Virus record (IMG/VR): IMGVR_UViG_3300042473_001265 | Coordinates: 186,001 to 250,000 of that record | Direction: 5' to 3' (one strand) | DNA length: 64,000 nucleotides | Shown: positions 3 through 8,435 of the stretch, piece after piece | How positions within the stretch are numbered: position 1 is the first letter of the stretch | Layout of the letters: each line of letters opens with the position of its first letter | Made by a program: the position numbers and the translations under genes | The notes under the pieces: generated by a model | The model's database searches: none | What the model was told of the DNA's origin: nothing | What the model saw: only the letters and a program-made list of their open reading frames with translations

Positions 3-617
3 CTGGCCGCAAGATCTGTTGAAGCTGATCCATATGATGAACAAATTGAAGAAATGCAAGCACAGGCCTTGCAAGAAGTCAGCTACGACACTGTGAACGA
101 GTTTACAAGACTGCAGGAACACCAGGAGTTTTTGTTGAAACTGCTGACCAGCAAGGACAGTTTCATTCGTAAAAAGATCATAGAACAAAATCTAAGTTAC
201 CTGAACACAAGACTCACACACTATCTTGATCGCATTGGATTGCCACACACTGTGGTGTTCCAAAATGATTTGAGCGTGAGCATTGAAGAATTGGGTCGCG
301 AACTGGACTTTGACAATCTGAGTCGTGGCGAACGCAACAGACTTATACTCAGCATGAGTTGGGCATTCCGAGATGTGTACGAAAGTTTGTACCAACCAAT
401 TAATGTGTTGTTCATTGACGAGATGATCGATTCTGGAATGGATACGCAAGGTGTCGAAAACAGCCTGGCCCTGCTCAAGCACATGAGTCGAGAACGTCAC
501 AAGAGTATTTGGCTTGTGAGCCATAGAGACGAATTGGCTGGCCGTGTTGAAAACATTCTCAAAGTGGTGAAAGAAAACGGCTTCACCAGCTATAATACGG
601 ATATTGAACTTGTTTAA
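3..617 (+). CDS. gp46: Recombination endonuclease ATPase subunit (gp46/SbcC/Rad50-like), C-terminal part; gene starts before the window
   Basis: Frame is open from position 3. ABC signature LSRGE, Walker B/D-loop LFIDEMIDSGMD, H-loop LVSHR. Confidence 0.9.
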   Translation: MAARSVEADPYDEQIEEMQAQALQEVSYDTVNEFTRLQEHQEFLLKLLTSKDSFIRKKIIEQNLSYLNTRLTHYLDRIGLPHTVVFQNDLSVSIEELGRELDFDNLSRGERNRLILSMSWAFRDVYESLYQPINVLFIDEMIDSGMDTQGVENSLALLKHMSRERHKSIWLVSHRDELAGRVENILKVVKENGFTSYNTDIELV

Positions 618-1572
618 CTATAAAACAGTACATCTTGAAATCAGTAGCAAATGCGTACTCAAATGTCCGCGCTGCCCTAGGACTGAGTTGAAGTTGGACC
701 GATTAAATCAAGAAATAACACTGAGCGACTTCAAGTCTGGATTTCCAGTGGATGTGCTGAGTCATATTGAACATTTTATATTTTGTGGTGACATTGGTGA
801 TCCAATATATGCTACAGAGTTTTTAGAAATTATACAATACATCAAACAACACAGCAAGATTCGTGTACGCATTGTGACCAATGGCAGTTACAAAAAACCC
901 GAATGGTGGCAACAGTTGGGTGCAATATTAACCGGTAACGATCAGATCACATTCAGTGTTGATGGATGGGACAACCAGTCAAACAATCAATATCGTGTCA
1001 ACAGCGATTTTGAAAGTATTGTATCAGGTATCACTGCGCTGAGAGCATCAAGCAGTTGCGTAATACAATGGTCTGCAATTTATTTTGCGTTTAATCAAGA
1101 CAAAATCAATGACATGCGTGATTTTGCAAAATCTTTAGGGTGCAACCAATTTCAAACTGTTAAAAGTTCAAAGTTTGATAATAGATACCTGGCCGACGGT
1201 ATAGACGAATTAAAGCCTGCCACAGAGTTTGTTGCAAGTACTTTGGTATACGAAACTAGTACAGAATTGTTAAATCAAACTGATTATATACCAATTGTAC
1301 CCAGAACCTCTGAACGGCCACATGCCTGGGCCAAATGTTTAAATTATAAAAAAGATTTGTTTGTTGGAATCAACGGACTAGTAATGCCGTGTCCTTGGTT
1401 CAACAACGGTTACAATGATAACGAGTTTATAAAAAAAAATCATACTCTCATGTCTATCAAAACTCGGCCATTTTTAGAAATAATAAATGATGTCGGTCTA
1501 TGGCAAAAATTACTAGATAGTTTTGATACATCGCCTTTGGAAATTTGTCAATTAAAGTGTAAAAATGGATAA
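604..1572 (+). CDS. Radical SAM protein with C-terminal SPASM/twitch-like Cys motif
   Basis: CxxxCxxC (CVLKCPRC), GDIGDP, TNGS, FSVDG; C-terminal C..PCPW..CxxxC. Confidence 0.85.
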   Translation: MNLFNYKTVHLEISSKCVLKCPRCPRTELKLDRLNQEITLSDFKSGFPVDVLSHIEHFIFCGDIGDPIYATEFLEIIQYIKQHSKIRVRIVTNGSYKKPEWWQQLGAILTGNDQITFSVDGWDNQSNNQYRVNSDFESIVSGITALRASSSCVIQWSAIYFAFNQDKINDMRDFAKSLGCNQFQTVKSSKFDNRYLADGIDELKPATEFVASTLVYETSTELLNQTDYIPIVPRTSERPHAWAKCLNYKKDLFVGINGLVMPCPWFNNGYNDNEFIKKNHTLMSIKTRPFLEIINDVGLWQKLLDSFDTSPLEICQLKCKNG

Positions 1573-2836
1573 TAAAAAAATATTTTGTACAGTACCTTGG
1601 TTTGAAGTTCATGTTAATGCTGACGGAACCTACCATACCTGCGGGGCACAGCCGACACCCAGCAGCATGCCGATGCTGTCGGGATTTACAGAAAAAAATA
1701 ATGTACATTCGATGCATATACAGGACTGGGTCAATGGTGAATACCAAAAAAGAGTCAGACTAGATAAACTCAATGGAGTTTACGAAAAAAGATGTTTGAT
1801 GTGTTATTCAGAAGAGGCCACTGGATCGTCTAGTAAAAGAATTAAAGAAAATTTAAAAAGCAAAATCTACGATGTCAAGTTTGATTTAACTTATAAACAC
1901 AGTCCAGATTTAGCAACCTTTGAGTTTTCAAGGCAAAATCAAGGACTGACTGATATTGTTAAGCCAATCAGCTATCACTTGAATCTTGGTAACGAATGCA
2001 ATTACGCTTGCAAAATGTGCGGACCGGCATGCAGCAGTAAACTAGCAGTTGAAGGAATAAAAGATGGCACATATAGCGGGCCAGCCAAATTAAACTGGAC
2101 CGAAGACACCGCTGCATGGAACTCGGTAACCGATTACATCTGTGCCACCGAAGATTTAAAATATGTTCATATCATTGGTGGCGAGCCACTGTTGAATCCA
2201 CGCTTTGAAGAACTGATTGATAAACTAATAGCAGCCGGCCGAACTGACATCTATTTTGGGTTCACTACAAACGGTTCTATAGTTGATATCAACTTGATTA
2301 AAAAACTAAATGTGTTCAGACATGTTGATATTGGTATCAGTATTGAATGCACCGGAACATTGAATGATTATATTAGAAAAGGTACCCGTACCGCAGAAGT
2401 GTTGGATAATATCGATATCTATTTAAAATATCGAAAAGAATCACATGTGTATGTCACAATCAGAACTGTACCTAGTGCGTTGAGTGTCGGCACTCTAGAC
2501 AGTCTTTATGCCTGGTGTGTAAATCGTCAACTTGATGTTATGACAAATTTATTAGTTAGACCAGATTATTTACAAATAAAAAATTTACCACTAGATGTAA
2601 AACAACGATTAATTAATCAATACGAGCAATGGGAACACAGTAAACCCATTGAAGGTTTTAGTAACCCTCGCGATCCTAACCGATTTAAAGAACACATTGA
2701 CAACGAAATTAATGTGGTACTTAGAAATTTGAAACTGGACAACGATCCAGTTATGACAACAAAATTATACGATATGCTGAAAAAATGGAATTGGCTCAGT
2801 AATCCTGAGATAGCAAAATATTTTGAAACCAAATAA
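1565..2836 (+). CDS. Radical SAM protein with N-terminal SPASM/twitch-like domain
   Basis: N-terminal FCTVPW..TC..CLMC; CNYACKMC; GGEPLL; TTNGS. Confidence 0.88.
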   Translation: MDNKKIFCTVPWFEVHVNADGTYHTCGAQPTPSSMPMLSGFTEKNNVHSMHIQDWVNGEYQKRVRLDKLNGVYEKRCLMCYSEEATGSSSKRIKENLKSKIYDVKFDLTYKHSPDLATFEFSRQNQGLTDIVKPISYHLNLGNECNYACKMCGPACSSKLAVEGIKDGTYSGPAKLNWTEDTAAWNSVTDYICATEDLKYVHIIGGEPLLNPRFEELIDKLIAAGRTDIYFGFTTNGSIVDINLIKKLNVFRHVDIGISIECTGTLNDYIRKGTRTAEVLDNIDIYLKYRKESHVYVTIRTVPSALSVGTLDSLYAWCVNRQLDVMTNLLVRPDYLQIKNLPLDVKQRLINQYEQWEHSKPIEGFSNPRDPNRFKEHIDNEINVVLRNLKLDNDPVMTTKLYDMLKKWNWLSNPEIAKYFETK

Positions 2837-2904: not shown

Positions 2905-3333
2905 ATGACATGGCACTATCAAAACACCCCAGTTGAGACACTGCCCGAAGAATGCATAGGATTTGTTTACCTGATCACCAATAATCTTTCTGGTCGCAAG
3001 TACATAGGCAAAAAACTAGCTAAATTTTCAAAAACCACTTACAAAACTGTAAAACAAAAAAACGGCATCAAGAAAAAAAAGAAAATTAGAACCAAAATTG
3101 ACAGTGATTGGCGCGAGTACTACGGTTCAAGCGAAAATCTAACTGTTGATGTCAACACCTTAGGCACCGAAAACTTCACCAGAGAAATACTTTACTATTG
3201 CACATCAAAAGCACAATGCAGTTACATTGAAGCTAGAGAACAGTTCAATCGCAAGGTATTGGAATCCACAGATTATTACAACGGCCAGATCTCAGTCAGA
3301 GTTCATGGCTCACACATCATAAACAAAATTTAA
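2905..3333 (+). CDS. Short GIY-YIG family nuclease (Seg-like catalytic domain only)
   Basis: GFVYLITN..RKYIGKK, YYGSS, conserved E (YIEAREQ) and YYN motifs; Lys-rich insert KKKKKIR. Confidence 0.8.
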   Translation: MTWHYQNTPVETLPEECIGFVYLITNNLSGRKYIGKKLAKFSKTTYKTVKQKNGIKKKKKIRTKIDSDWREYYGSSENLTVDVNTLGTENFTREILYYCTSKAQCSYIEAREQFNRKVLESTDYYNGQISVRVHGSHIINKI

Positions 3334-3747
3334 GGCAACACAAACGACACTGTGCCGGATGTTTGATTCGGCTCCATTGAGGAACGGTGAGATACCCGGT
3401 CTGGACTTGGACGTCAAAGGCAATTGCTAACTTAAGGCAACAAATGGTCGGGGCTCTGTGAAACAGATACAACCCCTGCTTATAGGACTTGGATCTATAT
3501 CGGGTTACTAGGGTTCCGTTGATATGTGAAGCTTGAGTAGGGGGTACCGGTCAACCGCCTCCGCGTAGGAAACTACAATCTCATTACTATAGATGACTGC
3601 TGTCACTCGGATGATGCTTTCAATTCACCGTGCATACGGTGAATTATGACCACATAATCTGGATGATACTAATACTTACTTTTCTAATTCAAACAAATGT
3701 CTGAGCGATAGCGATAGACATAGATACACGAAGTGTATCTTGAACTG
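3334..3747 (+). ncRNA. Putative large structured non-coding element (ncRNA or origin); family not recognised, strand inferred
   Basis: Longest ORF-free gap in a gene-dense window. Stem-loops at 3354-3372, 3450-3476, 3565-3576 (GAAA tetraloop), 3622-3645 (perfect 10-bp stem), 3697-3721 and 3722-3740. Confidence 0.55.
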
Positions 3748-4086
3748 TTAGAGATTAGTATCAGGCCAATCTCTAAACAAGGCATGTTGTATAGTTGAAC
3801 AATCTACAAACTGATTAAAGCTCTTGTGTTTGACTTCAAGTTCGCCTTCTAAAGGTGCTACTCTTTTAAATGCCTGATCCATTTGGGCCATGCCTGTGAA
3901 CTCCATGATGATCATCCATTCAGGCATGTCTGCAATGCTACGGAATCCCATCTTGCAGCGGGTGATTCTATAGTTCTCCATGTTGCCTTCAGAGATCAAA
4001 TGATCAAAGAAACTTTTCATGCCCGCGACCCATTCAAGGTCTGTGATGTCGCCTTCTTTGTTTGCCCAAATTGTGTATAAATCCAT
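3748..4086 (-). CDS. Conserved hypothetical protein (DUF6614-like)
   Basis: 112-aa ORF; MDLYTIWA..YRITRCKMGF..PEWMIIMEF..FRDWPD resembles DUF6614 from memory. Confidence 0.6.
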   Translation of the reverse strand: MDLYTIWANKEGDITDLEWVAGMKSFFDHLISEGNMENYRITRCKMGFRSIADMPEWMIIMEFTGMAQMDQAFKRVAPLEGELEVKHKSFNQFVDCSTIQHALFRDWPDTNL

Positions 4087-4088
4087 AG

Positions 4089-4532
4089 TTACTCCAGTGG
4101 TCCTAGTATTTCAAATCCGTCCATGTCAGATTTGTACAAGTGTGCCTGTTCAAGATACAAGTATTCAAACCCTCGTTCCTTGTAGATAGCACACTCTGCT
4201 TTCATTGTTTCAATACCCAGTCTCAGCCGGGGCTTGTGATATGTCCATGCAAATTGATCACACAAGGCATTGTGCTGATCAAATCTGCGTATCAAGCTCC
4301 AGGCTACCAGTTGATCTTGATCAAAGTATCCAATGATGTCTGCCATGGGGTCAAAGTATCGACTGTGAAATATTGGCATTACTGATGCAAAGTGTTTGTA
4401 TGTGCAGTAAGTTTTGTAGATACTGTCCAACTGATCCAGTACTGACGGTTCTCTACTGGTGATATACTGCCACTTGATTGTGGGAACATAGTTGGTCTTG
4501 CTCAAGTCTATTCTAGCAAATTGATAGCTCAT
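4089..4532 (-). CDS. Aminoacyl-tRNA-protein transferase C-terminal (ATE/Bpt GNAT)-like protein
   Basis: GYFDQDQLVAWS..RLGIETMKAECAIYKERGFEYLYL resembles the ATE_C pattern (G.LVAV..SLG...L.EI..A...GL.YLYLG). Confidence 0.6.
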   Translation of the reverse strand: MSYQFARIDLSKTNYVPTIKWQYITSREPSVLDQLDSIYKTYCTYKHFASVMPIFHSRYFDPMADIIGYFDQDQLVAWSLIRRFDQHNALCDQFAWTYHKPRLRLGIETMKAECAIYKERGFEYLYLEQAHLYKSDMDGFEILGPLE

Positions 4533-5035
4533 GCTCTGGGATCCTGTCTATGCTGAAACAACTGTTCAAGATACTGGTTGGGCCAAGAATTATAAAATCC
4601 TTTTGTATGCATTTGTGCTGCTGCTGTGTTCAGTTTGCTGAGACTTTGCAACATGGCCAGGGCATAGGTGCCTTGATTCATGCTGATGCCGTTGACAATT
4701 TCAGCATCTGCAGGATGATCTTCCAGCACCAGTAAATCATTCGCTAACAAAAAATCCTGGTTGGCCTGGTCCAGGCTAGAATGAAACAGATCATACGCCC
4801 ATTCTGCAGGATCATAAGCATAGATTATGACTTCTGCTGTGCCCAAGCCGTCTCTGCAGCGATTGCGTAGATCATAATATGGGTCTGACCCAACGATGAT
4901 TTTAACTGTGCCTGACAGTCGTGCTTTTCTAGCAAATGGACAAGGAGCCCAGTTGCCCAGTGCAGGATGCGGAACTTCTACAAAATTCTCTACCCAGTGC
5001 AGGATGTCTCGGGTTACAGCGTCTAAGTCTAACAT
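4529..5035 (-). CDS. Hypothetical protein, DUF1415-like
   Basis: W...FV......LG...PCPFARKA and DHP motifs; 4-nt overlap with the next gene. Confidence 0.55.
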   Translation of the reverse strand: MLDLDAVTRDILHWVENFVEVPHPALGNWAPCPFARKARLSGTVKIIVGSDPYYDLRNRCRDGLGTAEVIIYAYDPAEWAYDLFHSSLDQANQDFLLANDLLVLEDHPADAEIVNGISMNQGTYALAMLQSLSKLNTAAAQMHTKGFYNSWPNQYLEQLFQHRQDPRA

Positions 5036-5036
5036 T

Positions 5037-5213
5037 TTAAAAAAACGGCAGTCCTGTCTTTTTTGTAGTTTCTAAATTTTCTTTGATAAGTGCAGAAATG
5101 GTAGTGCGCTCATCTGGACTGAGATTCAGCGCAGATTCATACGACAACCCACCACGCATGTACCATACCATTTTTAACGCCTCTTGCTTGATTTCTCTGC
5201 TTTCTTTTTCCAT
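5037..5213 (-). CDS. Small baseplate-hub assembly/chaperone ORF (gp51-like); may be expressed as a -1 frameshift extension of the upstream gene
   Basis: MEKESREIKQEALKMVWYMRGGLSY..ER..LIKEN; the frame stays open upstream across the slippery site at 5267-5273. Confidence 0.6.
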   Translation of the reverse strand: MEKESREIKQEALKMVWYMRGGLSYESALNLSPDERTTISALIKENLETTKKTGLPFF

Positions 5214-5251
5214 TTGGTCCACCCAGTTGGAAATTTGTTCAGAGTCCAAGA

Positions 5252-6088
5252 CTAAGAGGCGTCCTCGAAAAAACTTGTCATGTCCAAGGTAACAGCTTGT
5301 TGGTAGTCTTTTTCGCATGCAGCACATTTCAACGTCATTGGTTGAATCTCTGCTTGGGATTTTATATTAACAATGTGATCTCGTATTTTAGCAAACAATC
5401 GTCGATCACAGTGTTTCAACATGTCTTCGATGTGTTCAGGATCACTGACCAATGCGTCGGGTGTTTTTACAGCAGCAATACTCTGTGACAACGCATGCAC
5501 TGTGATTTCTGTAATTTTCATCAAGGCTGCACTCAGTGCGGACATTCTCTGTTCGTTTGGCATTTCTACGCCAGGTAATGTTTCTAAGATTTTTTGTTCT
5601 TCAAACTGACGTTGATTGTTATCGTTGAGATTCTTATAAGTCATTGGTTTGAAAAAAATCTCAAGATCGCCAGCCGTCACTGGCATAGAATAGTCCGGCG
5701 CCTTCATGCGTTCCAACATTGTTCTCAAATCCATTCCGTAATCATCTTCGTTTTTACAATGAGGACAGGTGGTTGAAACTTCCATGATATGACCGTAACT
5801 GGCAATGCGAATAGCTACAAGAATAGTGTCAACATCCATAGCAGGTATTGCCCATGGATCAACAATGTTGGGTATACAACTTTTAATGACATTGGTAACA
5901 GCATTGCCGTTGAACAAGGCATCAGGAGTTCTGTAGGTAATTTCGTCAATGGCAGTCATTGGATAAACTGGCAGCTCACGGTTGGCTGGCATGGTCAACG
6001 CCCCGGGTGTATAATGCTCTCCGTTGCTGGGCAGTTTGACATAGATTGCTGGCTGTCTAAAATACTGTGTTAGCGGGTTAATTGACAT
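5252..6088 (-). CDS. Baseplate hub subunit / tail assembly chaperone (T4 gp26-like)
   Basis: LPSNG, PMTAIDE, D.DTILVAIRIASYG, and two CxxC pairs (CPHC, CAAC). Confidence 0.75.
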   Translation of the reverse strand: MSINPLTQYFRQPAIYVKLPSNGEHYTPGALTMPANRELPVYPMTAIDEITYRTPDALFNGNAVTNVIKSCIPNIVDPWAIPAMDVDTILVAIRIASYGHIMEVSTTCPHCKNEDDYGMDLRTMLERMKAPDYSMPVTAGDLEIFFKPMTYKNLNDNNQRQFEEQKILETLPGVEMPNEQRMSALSAALMKITEITVHALSQSIAAVKTPDALVSDPEHIEDMLKHCDRRLFAKIRDHIVNIKSQAEIQPMTLKCAACEKDYQQAVTLDMTSFFEDAS

Positions 6089-6143
6089 GAGATTTTCCTA
6101 TATAAATATAGTTATGGCAATTATTACCCAAGGCGAATAAAAT

Positions 6144-8435
6144 ATGGCTGGATTTACACCCGAAGAAGCAGCAGCAATCAAACAGCAAGAGATAGAGGAC
6201 ATCCTACGGTTTGGGCGAGCCAGTGACGAAACTCGTAAACAGCTAATGGACTTGTCAGTTGGCGTCAAAGGCACCACTGAAGGGCTAACTAGAAATTTTA
6301 AAGCTCTTGGCACTAGTGGAATAAGTTTAGCCAAAGAACTAAATGCAGGTGTAGTTGGCGCCAGTGTTTTCAACGATTCCATTGGCAGTGTGTCTAATGC
6401 TTTGGGGGATTTGGTTGGACTAATTCCTTATGTGGGAGGTGCTCTTAAAACGCTGGTCAAAGGAGCAAGCGAGTATACTCAAGCAGTAAACAAGCAGGCT
6501 GATCAGCTGTATAGCACCTATAAACAAATGGGTGCAATTGGTGCAGCCGGTGCCGGCGGCATGCAGTCAGTGTATGACAATCTAAAAAAACTCAATCTTG
6601 GCGTCAACGAACTAAGCGACTTTGCCAGTCTCGTTGGTGAAAATGCTCAAACTCTGGCCAGTTTTGGAAAAACAGTTGGCAGTGGTCTTGATGAATTTGC
6701 AAACATATCCAATGCAATTCAACAAAGCGATGTAGGTGCAGAATTCCGTGACATGGGTATCAGCGTCATGGAAATAAACAAAGGCATTGCTGGTTACACC
6801 AAGATGCAAAATTTGGTAGGCGGCCGTCAAAAAATGACCACAGATCAATTGATTGCTGCGTCACAAGACTACATCAGAGAAGTGGATCTGTTGGCCAAGA
6901 TCACAGGCAAAAATAGAGCCGAGCAAGAAGCATCTAAAGAAAGTGCCATGGCAGAAGAACGCTATGCTGCTTACAAATACGAGTTGGATCAACGAGCCAA
7001 AATGGGCGACGAAGCAGCCAAGGCTCAACTGGCTACTGTTGAAGGCACACAAATCATGTTGGACAAGATGGCGCCAGAAACACGCAAAGGTTTCTTGAAC
7101 ATTCTTTCTGGCACATTAGATACTCCAGAAGCTGCTAAACTACTGATGACCATGCCTAATGCAGCAGCAATAGCCGGCAAACAAACATTTACACAAGCTG
7201 AATTTCAAGCAGCAGCACTCAAAGACATTACCAGCAACCTGCAAGGTGGCGGCCTGCAATTGGCCAAAATGGGATCTAATAATGATACATTTTTGTCTAT
7301 TCAAGAACAAATGAAGCTAAAAGCCCATCTTGAAGGCGCAACCTACGATGAAAGACTGGCTGCTGCCAAAACAGGTCAAAAGTTAACCGACCAAGCCACT
7401 AAAAACATGGGCAAGATCGAAGATGCAAATCGTACATCTCGTGACAATCTCAATGATTTGGTCAATGCCGGCATAGAACCTGTTACTGCAGGTATGAAAG
7501 GCTTGGCCAACGCTACTGATGCCACTATCACTGCCATGACAAAAATGGCAGGAATGGCAGGTGTAACAGTCAAGAAGCGCGATGCAGCACCAGCAGCAGC
7601 ATCAGCACCGCCAGCAGCGCCAACACCAAGTGGAGCAGCACCTAGAGCAAATATTAGTGGACAGTTAAAAGACGATTTATTAAGTCGTCTGTCATCTTCT
7701 GGAATCACTGATAAAAAAGCTCAAGCCAATGTATTGGCACAGTTTGATGCCGAGTCTGGTGGCAACACAGGCGCACAAGAAAAATTAGGCTACAGTGCCA
7801 AACGATTGTTAGAAGTATTTCCAAAGAAATTCAAAGATTTGCAGGATGCTGAATCTGTTGCATCAGCTGGACAAGAAGCCATAGGTAATCGAATCTACGG
7901 CGGCCGGATGGGCAATGCCGCAGACGAAGGATTCAAATACCGTGGTCGTGGTCTGGTACAGTTGACTGGCAAAGACAATTATAAAAAGTTTGGCGAGTTA
8001 TTGGGAATTGATTTAGTTAAAGATCCAGATTTGGCTGCAACTCCTGAAATTGCCAAAGCAATTGCTGTAGAATATGTCAAACAAAAACAACAATCTGGTA
8101 CAGATTTGACCAACATTGCAGATCTTGGCAAGGCCATTGGCTATGCTGGTGGCCAAGCAGAAACTGCAAAACGAGCCAACATAGCCACAGCATACATGGC
8201 AGGTGGTGGAGTAATCAAAGCCACGCCTGGTGGTGTAGATCTTGTAGCGGGAGAAGCTGGACAAAACGAAGCAATAGTTCCATTGCCTGATGGCAGATCA
8301 ATACCTGTGCAAATGCAAGGAGCTGATCAACAAACTGGAATTATGGCTGAACAATTGGCCCGTCTGGATGATATTATGCGTGTGTTGCAAAATCAATTGG
8401 GTGTGTCAGAAAAGATTTTAAAGTATGCACAGTAA
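6144..8435 (+). CDS. Tape-measure-like protein with a C-terminal GH19 (chitinase/lysozyme-like) muralytic domain
   Basis: Long Ala/Gln-rich helical region, then AQFDAESG..E.LGYS..GNRIYGGRMGN..YRGRGLVQLTGKDNY, and a GEAG.EAIVPL tail. Confidence 0.75.
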   Translation: MAGFTPEEAAAIKQQEIEDILRFGRASDETRKQLMDLSVGVKGTTEGLTRNFKALGTSGISLAKELNAGVVGASVFNDSIGSVSNALGDLVGLIPYVGGALKTLVKGASEYTQAVNKQADQLYSTYKQMGAIGAAGAGGMQSVYDNLKKLNLGVNELSDFASLVGENAQTLASFGKTVGSGLDEFANISNAIQQSDVGAEFRDMGISVMEINKGIAGYTKMQNLVGGRQKMTTDQLIAASQDYIREVDLLAKITGKNRAEQEASKESAMAEERYAAYKYELDQRAKMGDEAAKAQLATVEGTQIMLDKMAPETRKGFLNILSGTLDTPEAAKLLMTMPNAAAIAGKQTFTQAEFQAAALKDITSNLQGGGLQLAKMGSNNDTFLSIQEQMKLKAHLEGATYDERLAAAKTGQKLTDQATKNMGKIEDANRTSRDNLNDLVNAGIEPVTAGMKGLANATDATITAMTKMAGMAGVTVKKRDAAPAAASAPPAAPTPSGAAPRANISGQLKDDLLSRLSSSGITDKKAQANVLAQFDAESGGNTGAQEKLGYSAKRLLEVFPKKFKDLQDAESVASAGQEAIGNRIYGGRMGNAADEGFKYRGRGLVQLTGKDNYKKFGELLGIDLVKDPDLAATPEIAKAIAVEYVKQKQQSGTDLTNIADLGKAIGYAGGQAETAKRANIATAYMAGGGVIKATPGGVDLVAGEAGQNEAIVPLPDGRSIPVQMQGADQQTGIMAEQLARLDDIMRVLQNQLGVSEKILKYAQ

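What the first reader, a model, noticed from the sequence alone, without database searches (positions are those of the whole stretch)
3748..5035. Three-gene operon with a stand-alone ATE/Bpt-like aminoacyl transferase domain
Seen: tightly coupled DUF1415-like, ATE_C-like and DUF6614-like genes directly downstream of the baseplate-hub genes. Established: ATE/Bpt enzymes transfer amino acids from charged tRNA to protein N-termini for N-degron proteolysis. Inference: a phage-encoded tRNA-dependent tagging or peptide-modification module. The 147-aa protein has only one GNAT-like lobe, so a neighbouring protein may supply the missing part.
Basis: partly seen in the sequence, partly recalled or inferred. 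Interest (0 to 1): 0.6.

Follow-up and report, generated by a model that had tools for sequence, protein, structure and literature searches.

The report
Phage ATE-like transferase with heme-type partner
A lake-water jumbo phage carries a tightly packed, highly conserved gene trio: a stripped-down relative of arginyl-tRNA transferases, a likely heme-type oxygenase of an uncharacterised family, and a small protein of unknown function. Together they look more like a small arginine/guanidine chemistry module than a protein-degradation tag system.

Summary
The three minus-strand genes are real and tightly packed: a 4-nt overlap and a 2-nt spacer. They follow a T4-type baseplate-hub gene in a 340-kb lake-water phage. 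The order p168-p147-p112 holds in 69/69 and 62/63 testable related viral loci.

- **p112** is a clear DUF6614 member.
- **p147** has no direct Pfam hit. Its family profile matches only Ate1 arginyltransferases in the PDB (E 7e-10), and longer relatives pass the ATE_C threshold. It keeps the Ate1 residues needed for Arg-tRNA use (W96, T109, E113, Y133/K134). It lacks ATE_N, which binds the protein N-terminus, and it lacks the acetyl-CoA motif.
- **p168** folds like DUF1415/DUF6875 (TM 0.82). Its only solved look-alike is AglA, a thiolate-heme guanidine N-hydroxylase, and a universally conserved Cys sits where AglA has its heme ligand.

In argolaphos biosynthesis, AglA acts on a substrate made by an Arg-tRNA-dependent transferase, so this enzyme pairing has a precedent. 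In relatives, arginine amidinotransferase genes are inserted inside the trio and also accompany distant p168/ATE_C pairs.

My best reading is an Arg-tRNA-dependent transferase plus oxygenase that makes a modified guanidino compound. N-degron tagging and a partner that supplies a "missing lobe" are not supported. This is a new variant of a known kind, and no biochemistry has been done.

The parts
4089..4532 (-). p147: a minimal ATE_C-type GNAT, the predicted aminoacyl-tRNA (probably Arg-tRNA) dependent transferase. It lacks ATE_N.
   Evidence: It has no direct Pfam hit. The family profile hits only Ate1 in the PDB (E 7e-10 with alignment A2; E 0.008 with short forms only). Long relatives carry PF04377 above its threshold. 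The AF2 model has pLDDT 96. Its best structural matches are L-PGS (Z 14.6), FemX (14.3) and MprF (14.0). W96, T109, E113, Y133, K134 and G106 are conserved across 176 relatives.
4529..5035 (-). p168: a DUF1415/DUF6875-like protein with an AglA-like fold and an invariant CP[FY]A cysteine (C32). It is a putative thiolate-heme oxygenase.
   Evidence: The AF2 model has pLDDT 95. It matches ESM-Atlas DUF1415/DUF6875 clusters at TM 0.82. AglA (9ub3) is the single outlier in the wide PDB search, at Z 7.7 over 150 residues with the next hit at 4.3. Weak collinear profile matches place C32 on the DUF1415 'LCPFA' and YqcI 'YPC' motifs. Cys, HP, Q and [FY]Y are kept down to 25% identity.
3748..4086 (-). 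p112: a DUF6614 protein, probably with a ferredoxin-like alpha+beta fold. Its role is unknown.
   Evidence: It matches PF20319 at E 3e-21. It is the most conserved gene of the run, with a median of 85% identity across 75 loci. The only weak PDB match is the N-terminal domain of coproheme decarboxylase (E 0.02).
5037..5249 (-). A conserved small ORF (about 70 aa, probably starting at a TTG) between the hub gene and p168.
   Evidence: The listed ORF is 5037-5327. Relatives call a 72-aa gene here. It is present in 74 of 80 loci at a median of 53% identity. It has no family hit.
5252..6088 (-). The baseplate hub gene, first gene of the same-strand run (context).
   Evidence: It matches PF12322 T4_baseplate at E 1.9e-15 and phrog_150 'baseplate hub' at E 3.9e-16.
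3344..3680 (.). A conserved non-coding element directly downstream of p112. It is a candidate structured RNA, and its link to the trio is unknown.
   Evidence: It shows 80-96% nucleotide identity in 40 or more related loci. Metatranscriptome contigs cover it. Seven base pairs show compensatory changes. It has no Rfam or tRNA match.

Best explanation
The trio is a phage-borne small-molecule (or at least non-N-degron) arginine/guanidine chemistry module.

p147 is an active aminoacyl-tRNA-dependent transferase of the ATE/Bpt lineage, reduced to the catalytic GNAT domain. It most likely takes arginine from Arg-tRNA(Arg), from the host or from the phage's own tRNA(Arg) genes, and joins it to an amine acceptor that is not a protein N-terminal Asp/Glu.

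p168 is a member of the uncharacterised DUF1415/DUF6875 superfamily. It is predicted to be a cysteine-ligated heme protein with the AglA (YqcI/YcgG) fold, and it oxidises (N-hydroxylates) the guanidino group of the product or of the acceptor. p112 (DUF6614) is an accessory protein of unknown role.

Shown: gene structure, synteny, homology, and conserved residues. Inferred: arginine as the donor, heme binding, the order of reactions, and the nature of the acceptor.
For: 1. ATE lineage. The family profile matches only Ate1 among 177,635 PDB sequences, and it still ranks Ate1 first when built from short forms alone. Relatives at E 1e-18 to 1e-6 pass the ATE_C gathering score.

2. Catalytic residues. 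I mapped p147 through the alignment onto the KlAte1 mutagenesis data (PMC9351520). Essential E277 (Arg side-chain pocket) corresponds to E113. Essential Y303/K304 correspond to Y133/K134. W260 corresponds to W96 and S273 to T109. These are among the most conserved columns in 176 relatives. Bpt, which transfers Leu, has Gln at the E277 position (PMC9351520).

3. Not an acetyl-CoA enzyme by motif. No [QR]xxGx[GA] motif occurs anywhere in p147. Plain GNATs score lower and cover only residues 18-147.

4. p168. Its one solved structural relative is AglA, a thiolate-heme guanidine N-hydroxylase whose heme ligand is Cys44 (PMC12866846). p168's invariant C32 aligns with the YqcI 'YPC' and DUF1415 'LCPFA' cysteines.

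5. Precedent. AglA's substrate, AMPn-Arg, is made by AglC from Arg, ArgRS and tRNA (PMC12866846 methods). The argolaphos gene cluster pairs a YqcI/YcgG gene with GNAT aminoacyl-tRNA ligases (PMC8976061).

6. Linkage. p168 lies upstream in 69/69 loci and p112 downstream in 62/63. The p168-p147 pair persists at 41-49% identity (L005, L006, L098). A long ATE_C form sits beside a p168 homologue at about 35% identity (L007/L008).

7. Arginine theme. Genes inserted inside the trio in 17 relatives, at two different junctions, are arginine amidinotransferases. Their profile hits HsvA, AGAT, SxtG and StrB1 at E 4e-27 to 1e-24, with the catalytic His and Cys kept. The same family flanks the distant p168/ATE_C pair in L007/L008 and a p168 homologue in L097.

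8. Selection. p147 (median 77% identity) and p112 (85%) are far more conserved than the structural genes beside them (about 52%). The phage carries 30 tRNA genes, three of them tRNA-Arg.
Against: - No direct Pfam hit exists for p147 or p168.
- The link from p168 to heme enzymes rests on one middling structural match (Z 7.7) and on weak profile alignments (E 1e-3 to 5e-2, probability 1-17%). The heme-propionate ligands were not mapped.
- The fold alone does not separate p147 from tandem acetyl-CoA GNATs (VipF Z 14.0, MAB_4324 13.9).
- One of the four Arg-pocket positions is Bpt-like (L125).
- p168-like genes occur in cultured phages that have no p147 homologue (Syn1, S-RIM44, HMO-2011, CRP-810). 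Four of five long ATE_C contexts show no p168 nearby. The two families are therefore not obligate partners.
- In this phage the amidinotransferase paralogues lie elsewhere in the genome.
- No redox partner was identified.
- The position inside a baseplate gene run would also fit a virion or assembly role.
- The complex prediction gave no support.
Confidence: 0.45

Rival explanations
1. One reading: p147 tags host or phage proteins at their N-termini with an amino acid from aminoacyl-tRNA, creating or relaying an N-degron for Clp-type proteolysis. A neighbouring protein replaces the missing ATE_N domain.
For: p147 is homologous to Ate1/Bpt and keeps the donor-side residues. It is translationally coupled to its neighbours. 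In bacteria an N-terminal Arg is a secondary destabilising residue for the Aat-dependent Leu/N-degron pathway (established knowledge).
Against: The acceptor pocket of Ate1 is built from ATE_N (R80, Y25, Y87, Zn-Cys4; PMC9351520), and that domain is absent. The only ATE_N signal in the phage is a 12.5-bit hit at E 0.05, far from the trio, and comparable weak sub-threshold hits appear in 6 of the 14 control genomes. p168 has an AglA/DUF1415 fold, not an ATE_N fold. p168 and p112 do not resemble the extensions of the long forms. The complex prediction gave no support. The associated amidinotransferases are small-molecule enzymes.
Confidence: 0.15
2. p147 aminoacylates a macromolecular or envelope acceptor other than a protein N-terminus, in the manner of FemX or MprF. 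Candidates are a cell-wall precursor, a membrane lipid, phage DNA, or the conserved RNA element next door. This would serve superinfection exclusion, lysis timing or anti-defence.
For: The best structural matches are Lys-/Ala-phosphatidylglycerol synthases, MprF and FemX. A highly conserved, transcribed non-coding element lies immediately downstream. The phage also carries cell-wall enzymes, namely an S11 D-Ala-D-Ala carboxypeptidase and a GH19 domain in the 763-aa protein.
Against: At sequence level the family is specifically ATE-like, not FemAB- or DUF2156-like. p147 has no membrane domain and no second GNAT lobe of the kind FemX and aminoacyl-PG synthases use to bind their acceptor. This reading gives no role to p168 or to the amidinotransferases.
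Confidence: 0.15
3. The three genes are functionally unrelated accessory genes that travel together in a late (baseplate) transcription unit. p147 is a generic acyl-CoA GNAT or a non-catalytic assembly factor.
For: The genes follow the baseplate hub gene on the same strand. A p168-like gene also lies beside baseplate gp25 in cyanophage Syn1. Other genes can be inserted between the three without loss of any of them. Tandem acetyl-CoA GNATs score nearly as well by fold.
Against: The catalytic ATE residues are kept under strong purifying selection. The acetyl-CoA motif is absent. The p168-p147 pairing recurs in contexts without baseplate genes (L007, L098). The inserted genes are always of one arginine-using enzyme family, not random cargo.
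Confidence: 0.12

Closest known systems
Ate1 / Bpt aminoacyl-tRNA-protein transferases (Pfam ATE_N + ATE_C)
   Same: The GNAT catalytic core is homologous: Ate1 is the only PDB sequence hit. The Trp, Ser/Thr, Glu, Tyr-Lys and Gly positions needed for Arg-tRNA use are conserved (PMC9351520).
   Different: p147 is 147 aa and starts at the GNAT domain. It has no ATE_N, no Zn-Cys4 site and no N-terminal Asp/Glu acceptor pocket. It falls below the Pfam threshold. It is phage-encoded and coupled to a DUF1415-type protein.
The AglC + AglA pair of argolaphos biosynthesis (an Arg-tRNA-dependent GNAT ligase plus a YqcI/YcgG thiolate-heme N-hydroxylase)
   Same: The logic is the same two-enzyme scheme: an aminoacyl-tRNA-dependent GNAT transferase next to a protein with the AglA fold and a cysteine at the ligand position.
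   Different: By PMC8976061, the cluster's candidate aminoacyl-tRNA GNAT ligases (AlpF, AlpO) are PF13480 FemAB-like proteins; AlpF is 342 aa and not ATE-like. p168 is 168 aa, against 274 aa for AlpD (the YqcI/YcgG gene, taken here as AglA), has no PF08892 hit, and belongs to DUF1415/DUF6875. No phosphonate genes are present. The host is a phage, not Streptomyces.
FemX, MprF/aminoacyl-PG synthases and Sbb17/Sba18 (other aminoacyl-tRNA-dependent GNAT transferases)
   Same: These are the best structural matches for the whole 147 residues, at Z 12.6-14.6.
   Different: They all have two GNAT lobes or membrane domains, and there is no sequence-level similarity to them.
DUF1415 (PF07209) and DUF6875 (PF21780)
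   Same: p168 shares their predicted fold (TM 0.82) and the W..FV...CPFA and HP motifs.
   Different: p168 does not reach either Pfam threshold. The families themselves have no known function, and only two incidental mentions turned up in the literature library.
Arginine:glycine amidinotransferase family (AGAT, StrB1, SxtG, HsvA)
   Same: The genes inserted in the trio in relatives, and two paralogues elsewhere in this phage, match this family at E 4e-27 to 1e-24 and keep the His and Cys catalytic motifs.
   Different: These genes are not part of this window. They are missed by Pfam and are catalogued only as phrog_25854, 'unknown function'.

Membership tests
ATE/Bpt aminoacyl-tRNA-protein transferase | Match to Pfam ATE_C (PF04377) at or above the gathering score | tested here: not met
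   p147 has no hit at E<=1. A six-frame PF04377 search of the whole phage finds nothing at E<=10. Relatives of 225-268 aa do pass, at 27-34 bits against a cut-off of 25.
ATE/Bpt aminoacyl-tRNA-protein transferase | Profile-level homology of the GNAT core to solved Ate1 | tested here: met
   The A2 profile hits KlAte1 at E 7e-10 and ScATE1 at E 1.3e-7, with no other credible PDB hit. The short-form-only profile still ranks Ate1 first, at E 0.008.
ATE/Bpt aminoacyl-tRNA-protein transferase | Donor-side functional residues (KlAte1 W260, S273, E277, Y303, K304) | tested here: met
   These correspond to W96, T109, E113, Y133 and K134 through the alignment. They are conserved in the close, short and long relatives. 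Their functional importance comes from PMC9351520.
ATE/Bpt aminoacyl-tRNA-protein transferase | ATE_N domain with the Zn-Cys4 site and the acceptor pocket for N-terminal Asp/Glu | tested here: not met
   p147 begins at the GNAT domain. No ATE_N is found in p147 or its long relatives. The only phage-wide signal is 12.5 bits at E 0.05 at genome position 319102, which I judge to be chance.
ATE/Bpt aminoacyl-tRNA-protein transferase | Aminoacyl-tRNA-dependent transfer activity | not testable with these tools
   This needs a biochemical assay.
Acetyl-/acyl-CoA GNAT N-acyltransferases | GNAT fold | tested here: met
   About 210 PDB representatives score Z>=8. Plain GNATs reach Z 11-12 over residues 18-147.
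Acetyl-/acyl-CoA GNAT N-acyltransferases | Pyrophosphate-binding motif [QR]xxGx[GA], or a hit to a Pfam acetyltransferase model | tested here: not met
   The motif is absent from the whole protein. There is no Acetyltransf_* hit at E<=1.
YqcI/YcgG thiolate-heme N-hydroxylases (for p168) | Match to PF08892 | tested here: not met
   No hit at E<=1. hhalign against six YqcI/YcgG sequences gives only E 0.05.
YqcI/YcgG thiolate-heme N-hydroxylases (for p168) | AglA 'sandwich' fold | tested here: inconclusive
   9ub3_A scores Z 7.7, rmsd 3.8 A, over 150 of 168 residues. It is the only hit above Z 5, with the next at 4.3. Foldseek gives probability 0.8-0.85 but E 0.05-0.07 for the best AglA entries.
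YqcI/YcgG thiolate-heme N-hydroxylases (for p168) | Axial cysteine ligand at the equivalent position; heme binding | tested here: inconclusive
   Invariant C32 aligns with the YqcI 'YPC' cysteine in a weak local alignment. The position agrees with AglA Cys44, given the aligned ranges. Heme binding itself cannot be tested here.
DUF1415 / DUF6875 (for p168) | Pfam model match | tested here: not met
   PF21780 scores 18.9 bits against a cut-off of 24.5. PF07209 is not reported.
DUF1415 / DUF6875 (for p168) | Shared fold and CPFA / HP motifs | tested here: met
   TM 0.82 over 161-163 residues to atlas clusters that carry these families. The motifs are seen in real DUF1415 sequences. hhalign gives E 1.4e-3 over the CPFA region.
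DUF6614 (for p112) | Pfam PF20319 match above the gathering score | tested here: met
   E 3e-21, 76.1 bits against a cut-off of 25, covering residues 1-110. All 120 listed homologues carry PF20319.

The most novel reading that the evidence does not exclude
Freshwater and marine T4-like phages encode a self-contained pathway that diverts Arg-tRNA into a non-ribosomal product. It would consist of a minimal ATE-type arginyl transferase, a new class of small thiolate-heme oxygenases (this would give the DUF1415/DUF6875 superfamily its first function), DUF6614, and, in many relatives, arginine amidinotransferases. Together they would synthesise an N-oxygenated guanidino metabolite during infection, such as an antimetabolite, a signal or a virion cofactor. 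The conserved RNA element next door might take part in this or regulate it.
Probability: 0.2. Interest if true: 0.85.

Novelty: new variant of a known kind. Interest (0 to 1): 0.62.

Why it matters
Aminoacyl-tRNA-dependent transferases outside the ribosome are few. They are Ate1/Bpt, Aat, FemABX, MprF, cyclodipeptide synthases, PEARLs and some natural-product ligases. None turned up for phages in the literature library searched.

Here a very abundant viral family, with over 2,000 90%-identity clusters in lake and marine metagenomes, keeps the Ate1 catalytic residues but has dropped the protein-binding domain. It is welded to an uncharacterised DUF1415-type protein whose only structural relative is a heme N-hydroxylase of arginine derivatives.

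If the model holds, it would:
- give a first functional handle on DUF1415, DUF6875 and DUF6614;
- show that phages siphon charged tRNA into secondary chemistry;
- provide a compact 147-aa scaffold for tRNA-dependent ligation.

If it fails, the trio is still one of the most conserved accessory modules of this phage lineage and needs explaining.

Tried and rejected
- **Cultured-phage searches.** blastn and tblastn against 50,697 cultured-phage records found no DNA match. p147 and p112 have no protein match. Only p168 has distant hits at 25-28% identity.
- **Direct family scans.** Pfam, PHROG and NCBIfam scans of p147 found nothing. A PF04377 six-frame scan of the phage found nothing.
- **Complex prediction.** The p168 + p147 job scored ipSAE 0.00 in both runs. 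That is no verdict, and I count it neither for nor against binding.
- **'Split gene' idea.** p168 and p112 profiles against the 26 long (>=200 aa) relatives, nearly all ATE_C long forms, give only noise at 5 bits or less, so I rejected it.
- **ATE_N elsewhere in the phage.** There is one 12.5-bit, E 0.05 hit in a 179-aa ORF at genome 318931-319467. It happens to precede an amidinotransferase paralogue, but such weak hits are common in the control genomes. I treat it as chance.
- **Bacterial context of p168 relatives.** In Bdellovibrionia and Acidobacteriaceae MAGs (L099-L101) the neighbours are an Mrp/NUBPL ATPase and a class II aminoacyl-tRNA synthetase, which tells nothing.
- **Family searches in Bdellovibrionota genomes.** DUF6875 was sought in 151 genomes and DUF6614 in 201, with no hits anywhere. 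These were uninformative.
- **PDB sequence search with the p168 profile.** Only chance hits to RSV F appeared.
- **DUF6614 literature.** The sole mention is a 44-aa anti-Druantia protein, 'Druad1', assigned to DUF6614 by a prediction. It is too short and too weakly assigned to transfer any function.
- **T4 late-promoter motif.** TATAAATA occurs once in 64 kb, at 6101-6108 on the + strand. It does not explain transcription of the trio. The sigma-70 and terminator scans were no better than shuffled sequence.
- **Neighbours of the long ATE_C form in L007.** They are mostly without family hits.
Full report
**Setting.** The window is bases 186001-250000 of a 340,172-bp IMG/VR virus record that is 98% complete. 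Near-identical DNA is held in many lake-water metagenome runs from separate studies, so this is a freshwater jumbo phage with T4-type structural genes.

The minus strand carries a compact run of genes:
- a 278-aa baseplate hub gene at 5252-6088 (PF12322 at E 1.9e-15; phrog_150);
- a conserved small ORF, listed as 5037-5327, with its real start probably at a TTG near 5249;
- p168 at 4529-5035;
- p147 at 4089-4532;
- p112 at 3748-4086.

p168 and p147 overlap by ATGA. p147 and p112 are 2 nt apart. The small ORF ends 1 nt before the p168 start.

**p112.** This is an unambiguous DUF6614 protein (PF20319, E 3e-21). Its 889 homologous clusters are all unnamed. The only hint about its fold is a weak profile match to the ferredoxin-like N-terminal domain of coproheme decarboxylase (E 0.02).

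**p147.** No Pfam, PHROG or NCBIfam model reaches E<=1. The ATE_C model finds nothing in six frames of the whole phage.
- Language-model features put p147 at 0.98 next to viral clusters in which 10-21% of members carry ATE_C.
- An exhaustive phmmer search finds 119 representatives. These include 225-268-aa proteins that align over the whole of p147, and five of eight tested pass the ATE_C gathering score.
- A profile of 46 family members matches, among all PDB sequences, only the Ate1 arginyltransferases (KlAte1 at E 7e-10, yeast ATE1 at E 1.3e-7). A profile of short forms alone still ranks Ate1 first (E 0.008).
- The AF2 model (pLDDT 96) is a single GNAT domain. Its best full-length structural matches are the aminoacyl-tRNA-dependent enzymes L-PGS (Z 14.6), FemX (14.3) and MprF (14.0), and Sbb17 scores 12.6. 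Two tandem acetyl-CoA GNATs tie with the best of them (VipF 14.0, MAB_4324 13.9). Simple GNATs score 11-12 and miss the first 17 residues.

Fold therefore does not settle the cosubstrate, but the sequence does lean one way. I used the alignment and the KlAte1 mutagenesis paper (PMC9351520; chain index = native numbering + 4). The residues map as follows:

| KlAte1 residue | Role | p147 residue |
|---|---|---|
| E277 | essential; pocket for the Arg side chain | E113 |
| Y303 / K304 | essential | Y133 / K134 |
| W260 | 18-fold Km effect | W96 |
| S273 | pocket | T109 |
| S255 | pocket | C91 (A/S in relatives) |
| Y289 | pocket | L125 |

Across 176 relatives, W96, E113, Y133, K134 and G106 are nearly invariant, and position 109 is Ser or Thr in most. 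Bpt, which transfers Leu, has Gln at the E277 position (PMC9351520). The retained Glu therefore argues for a cationic donor, most simply arginine. The acetyl-CoA pyrophosphate motif [QR]xxGx[GA] is absent.

What p147 lacks is ATE_N. In Ate1 that domain carries the Zn-Cys4 site and the R80/Y25/Y87 pocket for the protein's N-terminal Asp/Glu. ATE/Bpt has only one GNAT fold, so 'one lobe missing' is better put as 'the protein-acceptor domain is missing'. The longer relatives have N- and C-terminal extensions of their own, and these are not detectably ATE_N.

**p168.** Pfam gives only a sub-threshold DUF6875 hit on the N-terminus. PHROGs gives two families of unknown function.
- The AF2 model (pLDDT 95) matches ESM-Atlas clusters annotated DUF1415/DUF6875 at TM 0.82 over the whole length (features 0.93).
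- Foldseek finds nothing below E 1e-3 in the PDB.
- The exhaustive aligner finds a single outlier: AglA of Streptomyces monomycini (9ub3_A), at Z 7.7 over 150 of 168 residues, with the next hit at 4.3.

AglA is the prototype of the YqcI/YcgG thiolate-heme enzymes, which N-hydroxylate guanidino groups. Its heme iron is bound by Cys44 (PMC12866846).

I fetched real DUF1415 and YqcI/YcgG genes from Bdellovibrionota genomes and compared profiles. The alignments are weak: E 1.4e-3 for p168 against DUF1415, 0.05 for p168 against YqcI, and 0.018 for DUF1415 against YqcI. They are collinear, though. They put p168's invariant C32 (in PCP[FY]AR) on the DUF1415 'LCPFA' and YqcI 'YPC' cysteines. A second shared 'G.HP...PY..L'-type motif appears in the DUF1415-YqcI alignment, and p168 has a similar DHP/MNQG stretch by eye. 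The Cys, the HP, a Gln and a [FY]Y motif survive down to 25% identity, including in homologues in cultured phages.

I therefore regard 'cysteine-ligated heme oxygenase' as the most likely function, at roughly even odds.

**Linkage.**
- Among 80 related IMG/VR loci (69-88% identical in p147), p168 lies upstream in 69 of 69 testable cases and p112 downstream in 62 of 63.
- The p168-p147 pair, with the same 4-nt overlap, recurs at 41-49% identity on unrelated contigs (L005, L006, L098).
- A long ATE_C form at 35% identity has a p168 homologue (34%) immediately downstream in convergent orientation (L007/L008).
- Median identities across the loci are hub 52%, small ORF 53%, p168 62%, p147 77% and p112 85%. 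The two smallest genes are under unusually strong constraint.
- The link is not obligate. p168-like genes occur without any p147 homologue in cyanophages Syn1 and S-RIM44 (again next to a baseplate gene, gp25), in Puniceispirillum phage HMO-2011, and in Roseobacter phage CRP-810, where it is coupled to a 2OG-Fe(II) oxygenase. Four other long-form contexts show no p168 nearby.

**The inserted genes.** In 17 of the 80 loci an extra gene sits inside the trio on the same strand and is tightly packed. It is a gene of about 410 aa between p168 and p147, or one of 323-338 aa between p147 and p112, or both. Pfam misses these genes, and PHROGs files them as phrog_25854, 'unknown'. Their profile, however, hits the arginine amidinotransferases HsvA, AGAT, SxtG and StrB1 at E 4e-27 to 1e-24 and keeps the catalytic His and the C-terminal 'GG.HC.T.D..R' cysteine motif.

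The same family lies next to the distant long-ATE_C/p168 pair in L007/L008. It also lies between a p168 homologue and a SPASM radical-SAM gene in L097. This phage has two paralogues elsewhere in its genome, at 133953-134981 and 319422-320381.

Three independent lines thus point at arginine or guanidine: the Ate1-type Glu pocket, the AglA-like partner, and the recurring amidinotransferases.

**Precedent and mechanism.** In argolaphos biosynthesis, AglA's substrate AMPn-Arg is made by AglC from arginine, ArgRS and tRNA (PMC12866846 methods). The gene cluster pairs the YqcI/YcgG gene with GNAT aminoacyl-tRNA ligases (PMC8976061).

By analogy, I propose that p147 transfers arginine from Arg-tRNA to an amine acceptor. 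The phage itself carries 30 tRNA genes, including three tRNA-Arg. p168 would then oxygenate a guanidino nitrogen. p112 remains unassigned. The acceptor, the order of steps and the electron donor are unknown. Confidence in the whole picture is about 0.45. Confidence that p147 is an ATE-lineage aminoacyl-tRNA transferase is about 0.75.

**Rivals.**
- N-degron tagging (0.15) is weakened by the absence of ATE_N and by the small-molecule nature of the partners.
- A FemX/MprF-like modification of the envelope, DNA or RNA (0.15) fits the structural matches but leaves p168 unexplained.
- Unrelated neighbours in a late operon (0.12) is weakened by the recurrence of the pair outside baseplate contexts and by the non-random identity of the inserted genes.
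- The idea that a neighbour supplies a missing lobe found no support.

**Novelty.** The kinds are known: ATE-type transferases, and the pairing of an aminoacyl-tRNA ligase with a heme N-hydroxylase. New here are an ATE_C-only enzyme, its fixed coupling to a DUF1415-type protein and to DUF6614, its viral home, and its abundance. I found no paper describing it. I classify it as a new variant of a known kind. Everything functional is inference from sequence and predicted structure.

**Side observations.**
- The roughly 330-nt non-coding stretch just downstream of p112 (3344-3680) is 80-96% identical across 40 or more related phages. It is the part of the 3.2-kb stretch best covered by contigs from four metatranscriptomes. 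It shows some compensatory base-pair changes. It matches no Rfam family and no tRNA. Its strand is unresolved.
- Two radical-SAM/SPASM genes (604-2836) and a SegE-type homing endonuclease (2905-3333) lie on the plus strand just beyond this element.

Noticed in passing
window 3344-3680 (between the p112 stop at 3748 and the SegE stop at 3333): This non-coding element of about 330 nt is conserved at 80-96% nucleotide identity in 40 or more related phage loci, more than the neighbouring protein genes. It always lies just after p112, or just after p147 in L032, which lacks p112. Metatranscriptome contigs from four runs cover it, and it holds the deepest bins of the 3.2-kb stretch. RNAalifold gives 59 pairs, 7 of them with compensatory changes. 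It has no Rfam or tRNA match, and its strand is unresolved. It is a candidate new structured RNA.
   Followed up: partly
related loci L012, L023, L025, L027, L045, L046, L047, L085, L019, L034, L043 (between p168 and p147); L026, L046, L047, L064, L081 (between p147 and p112); own genome G000:C1:133953-134981 and 319422-320381: A phage gene family filed as phrog_25854 'unknown function', and missed by Pfam, is an arginine amidinotransferase (PDB profile hits to HsvA, AGAT, SxtG and StrB1 at E 4e-27 to 1e-24). It has repeatedly inserted inside the trio. In this phage one paralogue sits beside a DegT-type aminotransferase, a carbamoyltransferase and an S11 D-Ala-D-Ala carboxypeptidase.
   Followed up: partly
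window 604-1572 and 1565-2836 (+), 2905-3333 (+): Two adjacent radical-SAM/SPASM genes run convergent to the trio, and a SegE-type GIY-YIG homing endonuclease lies between them and the trio. A SPASM radical-SAM gene also follows a p168 homologue plus an amidinotransferase in the distant contig L097, so the radical-SAM genes may belong to the same chemistry.
   Followed up: partly
own genome G000:C1:101006-111767 (outside the window): There is a block of 30 tRNA genes covering most amino acids, including three tRNA-Arg, plus a tmRNA-like gene.
   Followed up: no
L094 and L095 (contigs of 183 kb and 148 kb of a MAG labelled Haliscomenobacter sp.): Two large contigs binned into a Bacteroidota MAG carry the whole hub-p168-p147-p112-SegE-radical-SAM arrangement at 61-88% protein identity. 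These are either mis-binned phage genomes or a hint at the host.
   Followed up: no
L120 (cyanophage Syn1, Syn1_090, T4-like gene cluster 824): A p168-like gene of cultured cyanomyoviruses lies just upstream of the baseplate wedge gene gp25. DUF1415-like genes thus sit next to baseplate genes in two distant T4-like lineages. The reason is unknown.
   Followed up: no
window 6101-6108 (+): The only TATAAATA (T4 late-promoter consensus) in the 64-kb window lies in the divergent intergenic region, upstream of the 763-aa gene with a GH19 domain that starts at 6144. This phage evidently does not use that motif generally.
   Followed up: no
own genome G000:C1:318931-319467 (+): A 179-aa ORF immediately upstream of the second amidinotransferase paralogue gives the phage's only ATE_N signal (12.5 bits, E 0.05). 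It is probably chance, but the position is curious.
   Followed up: partly
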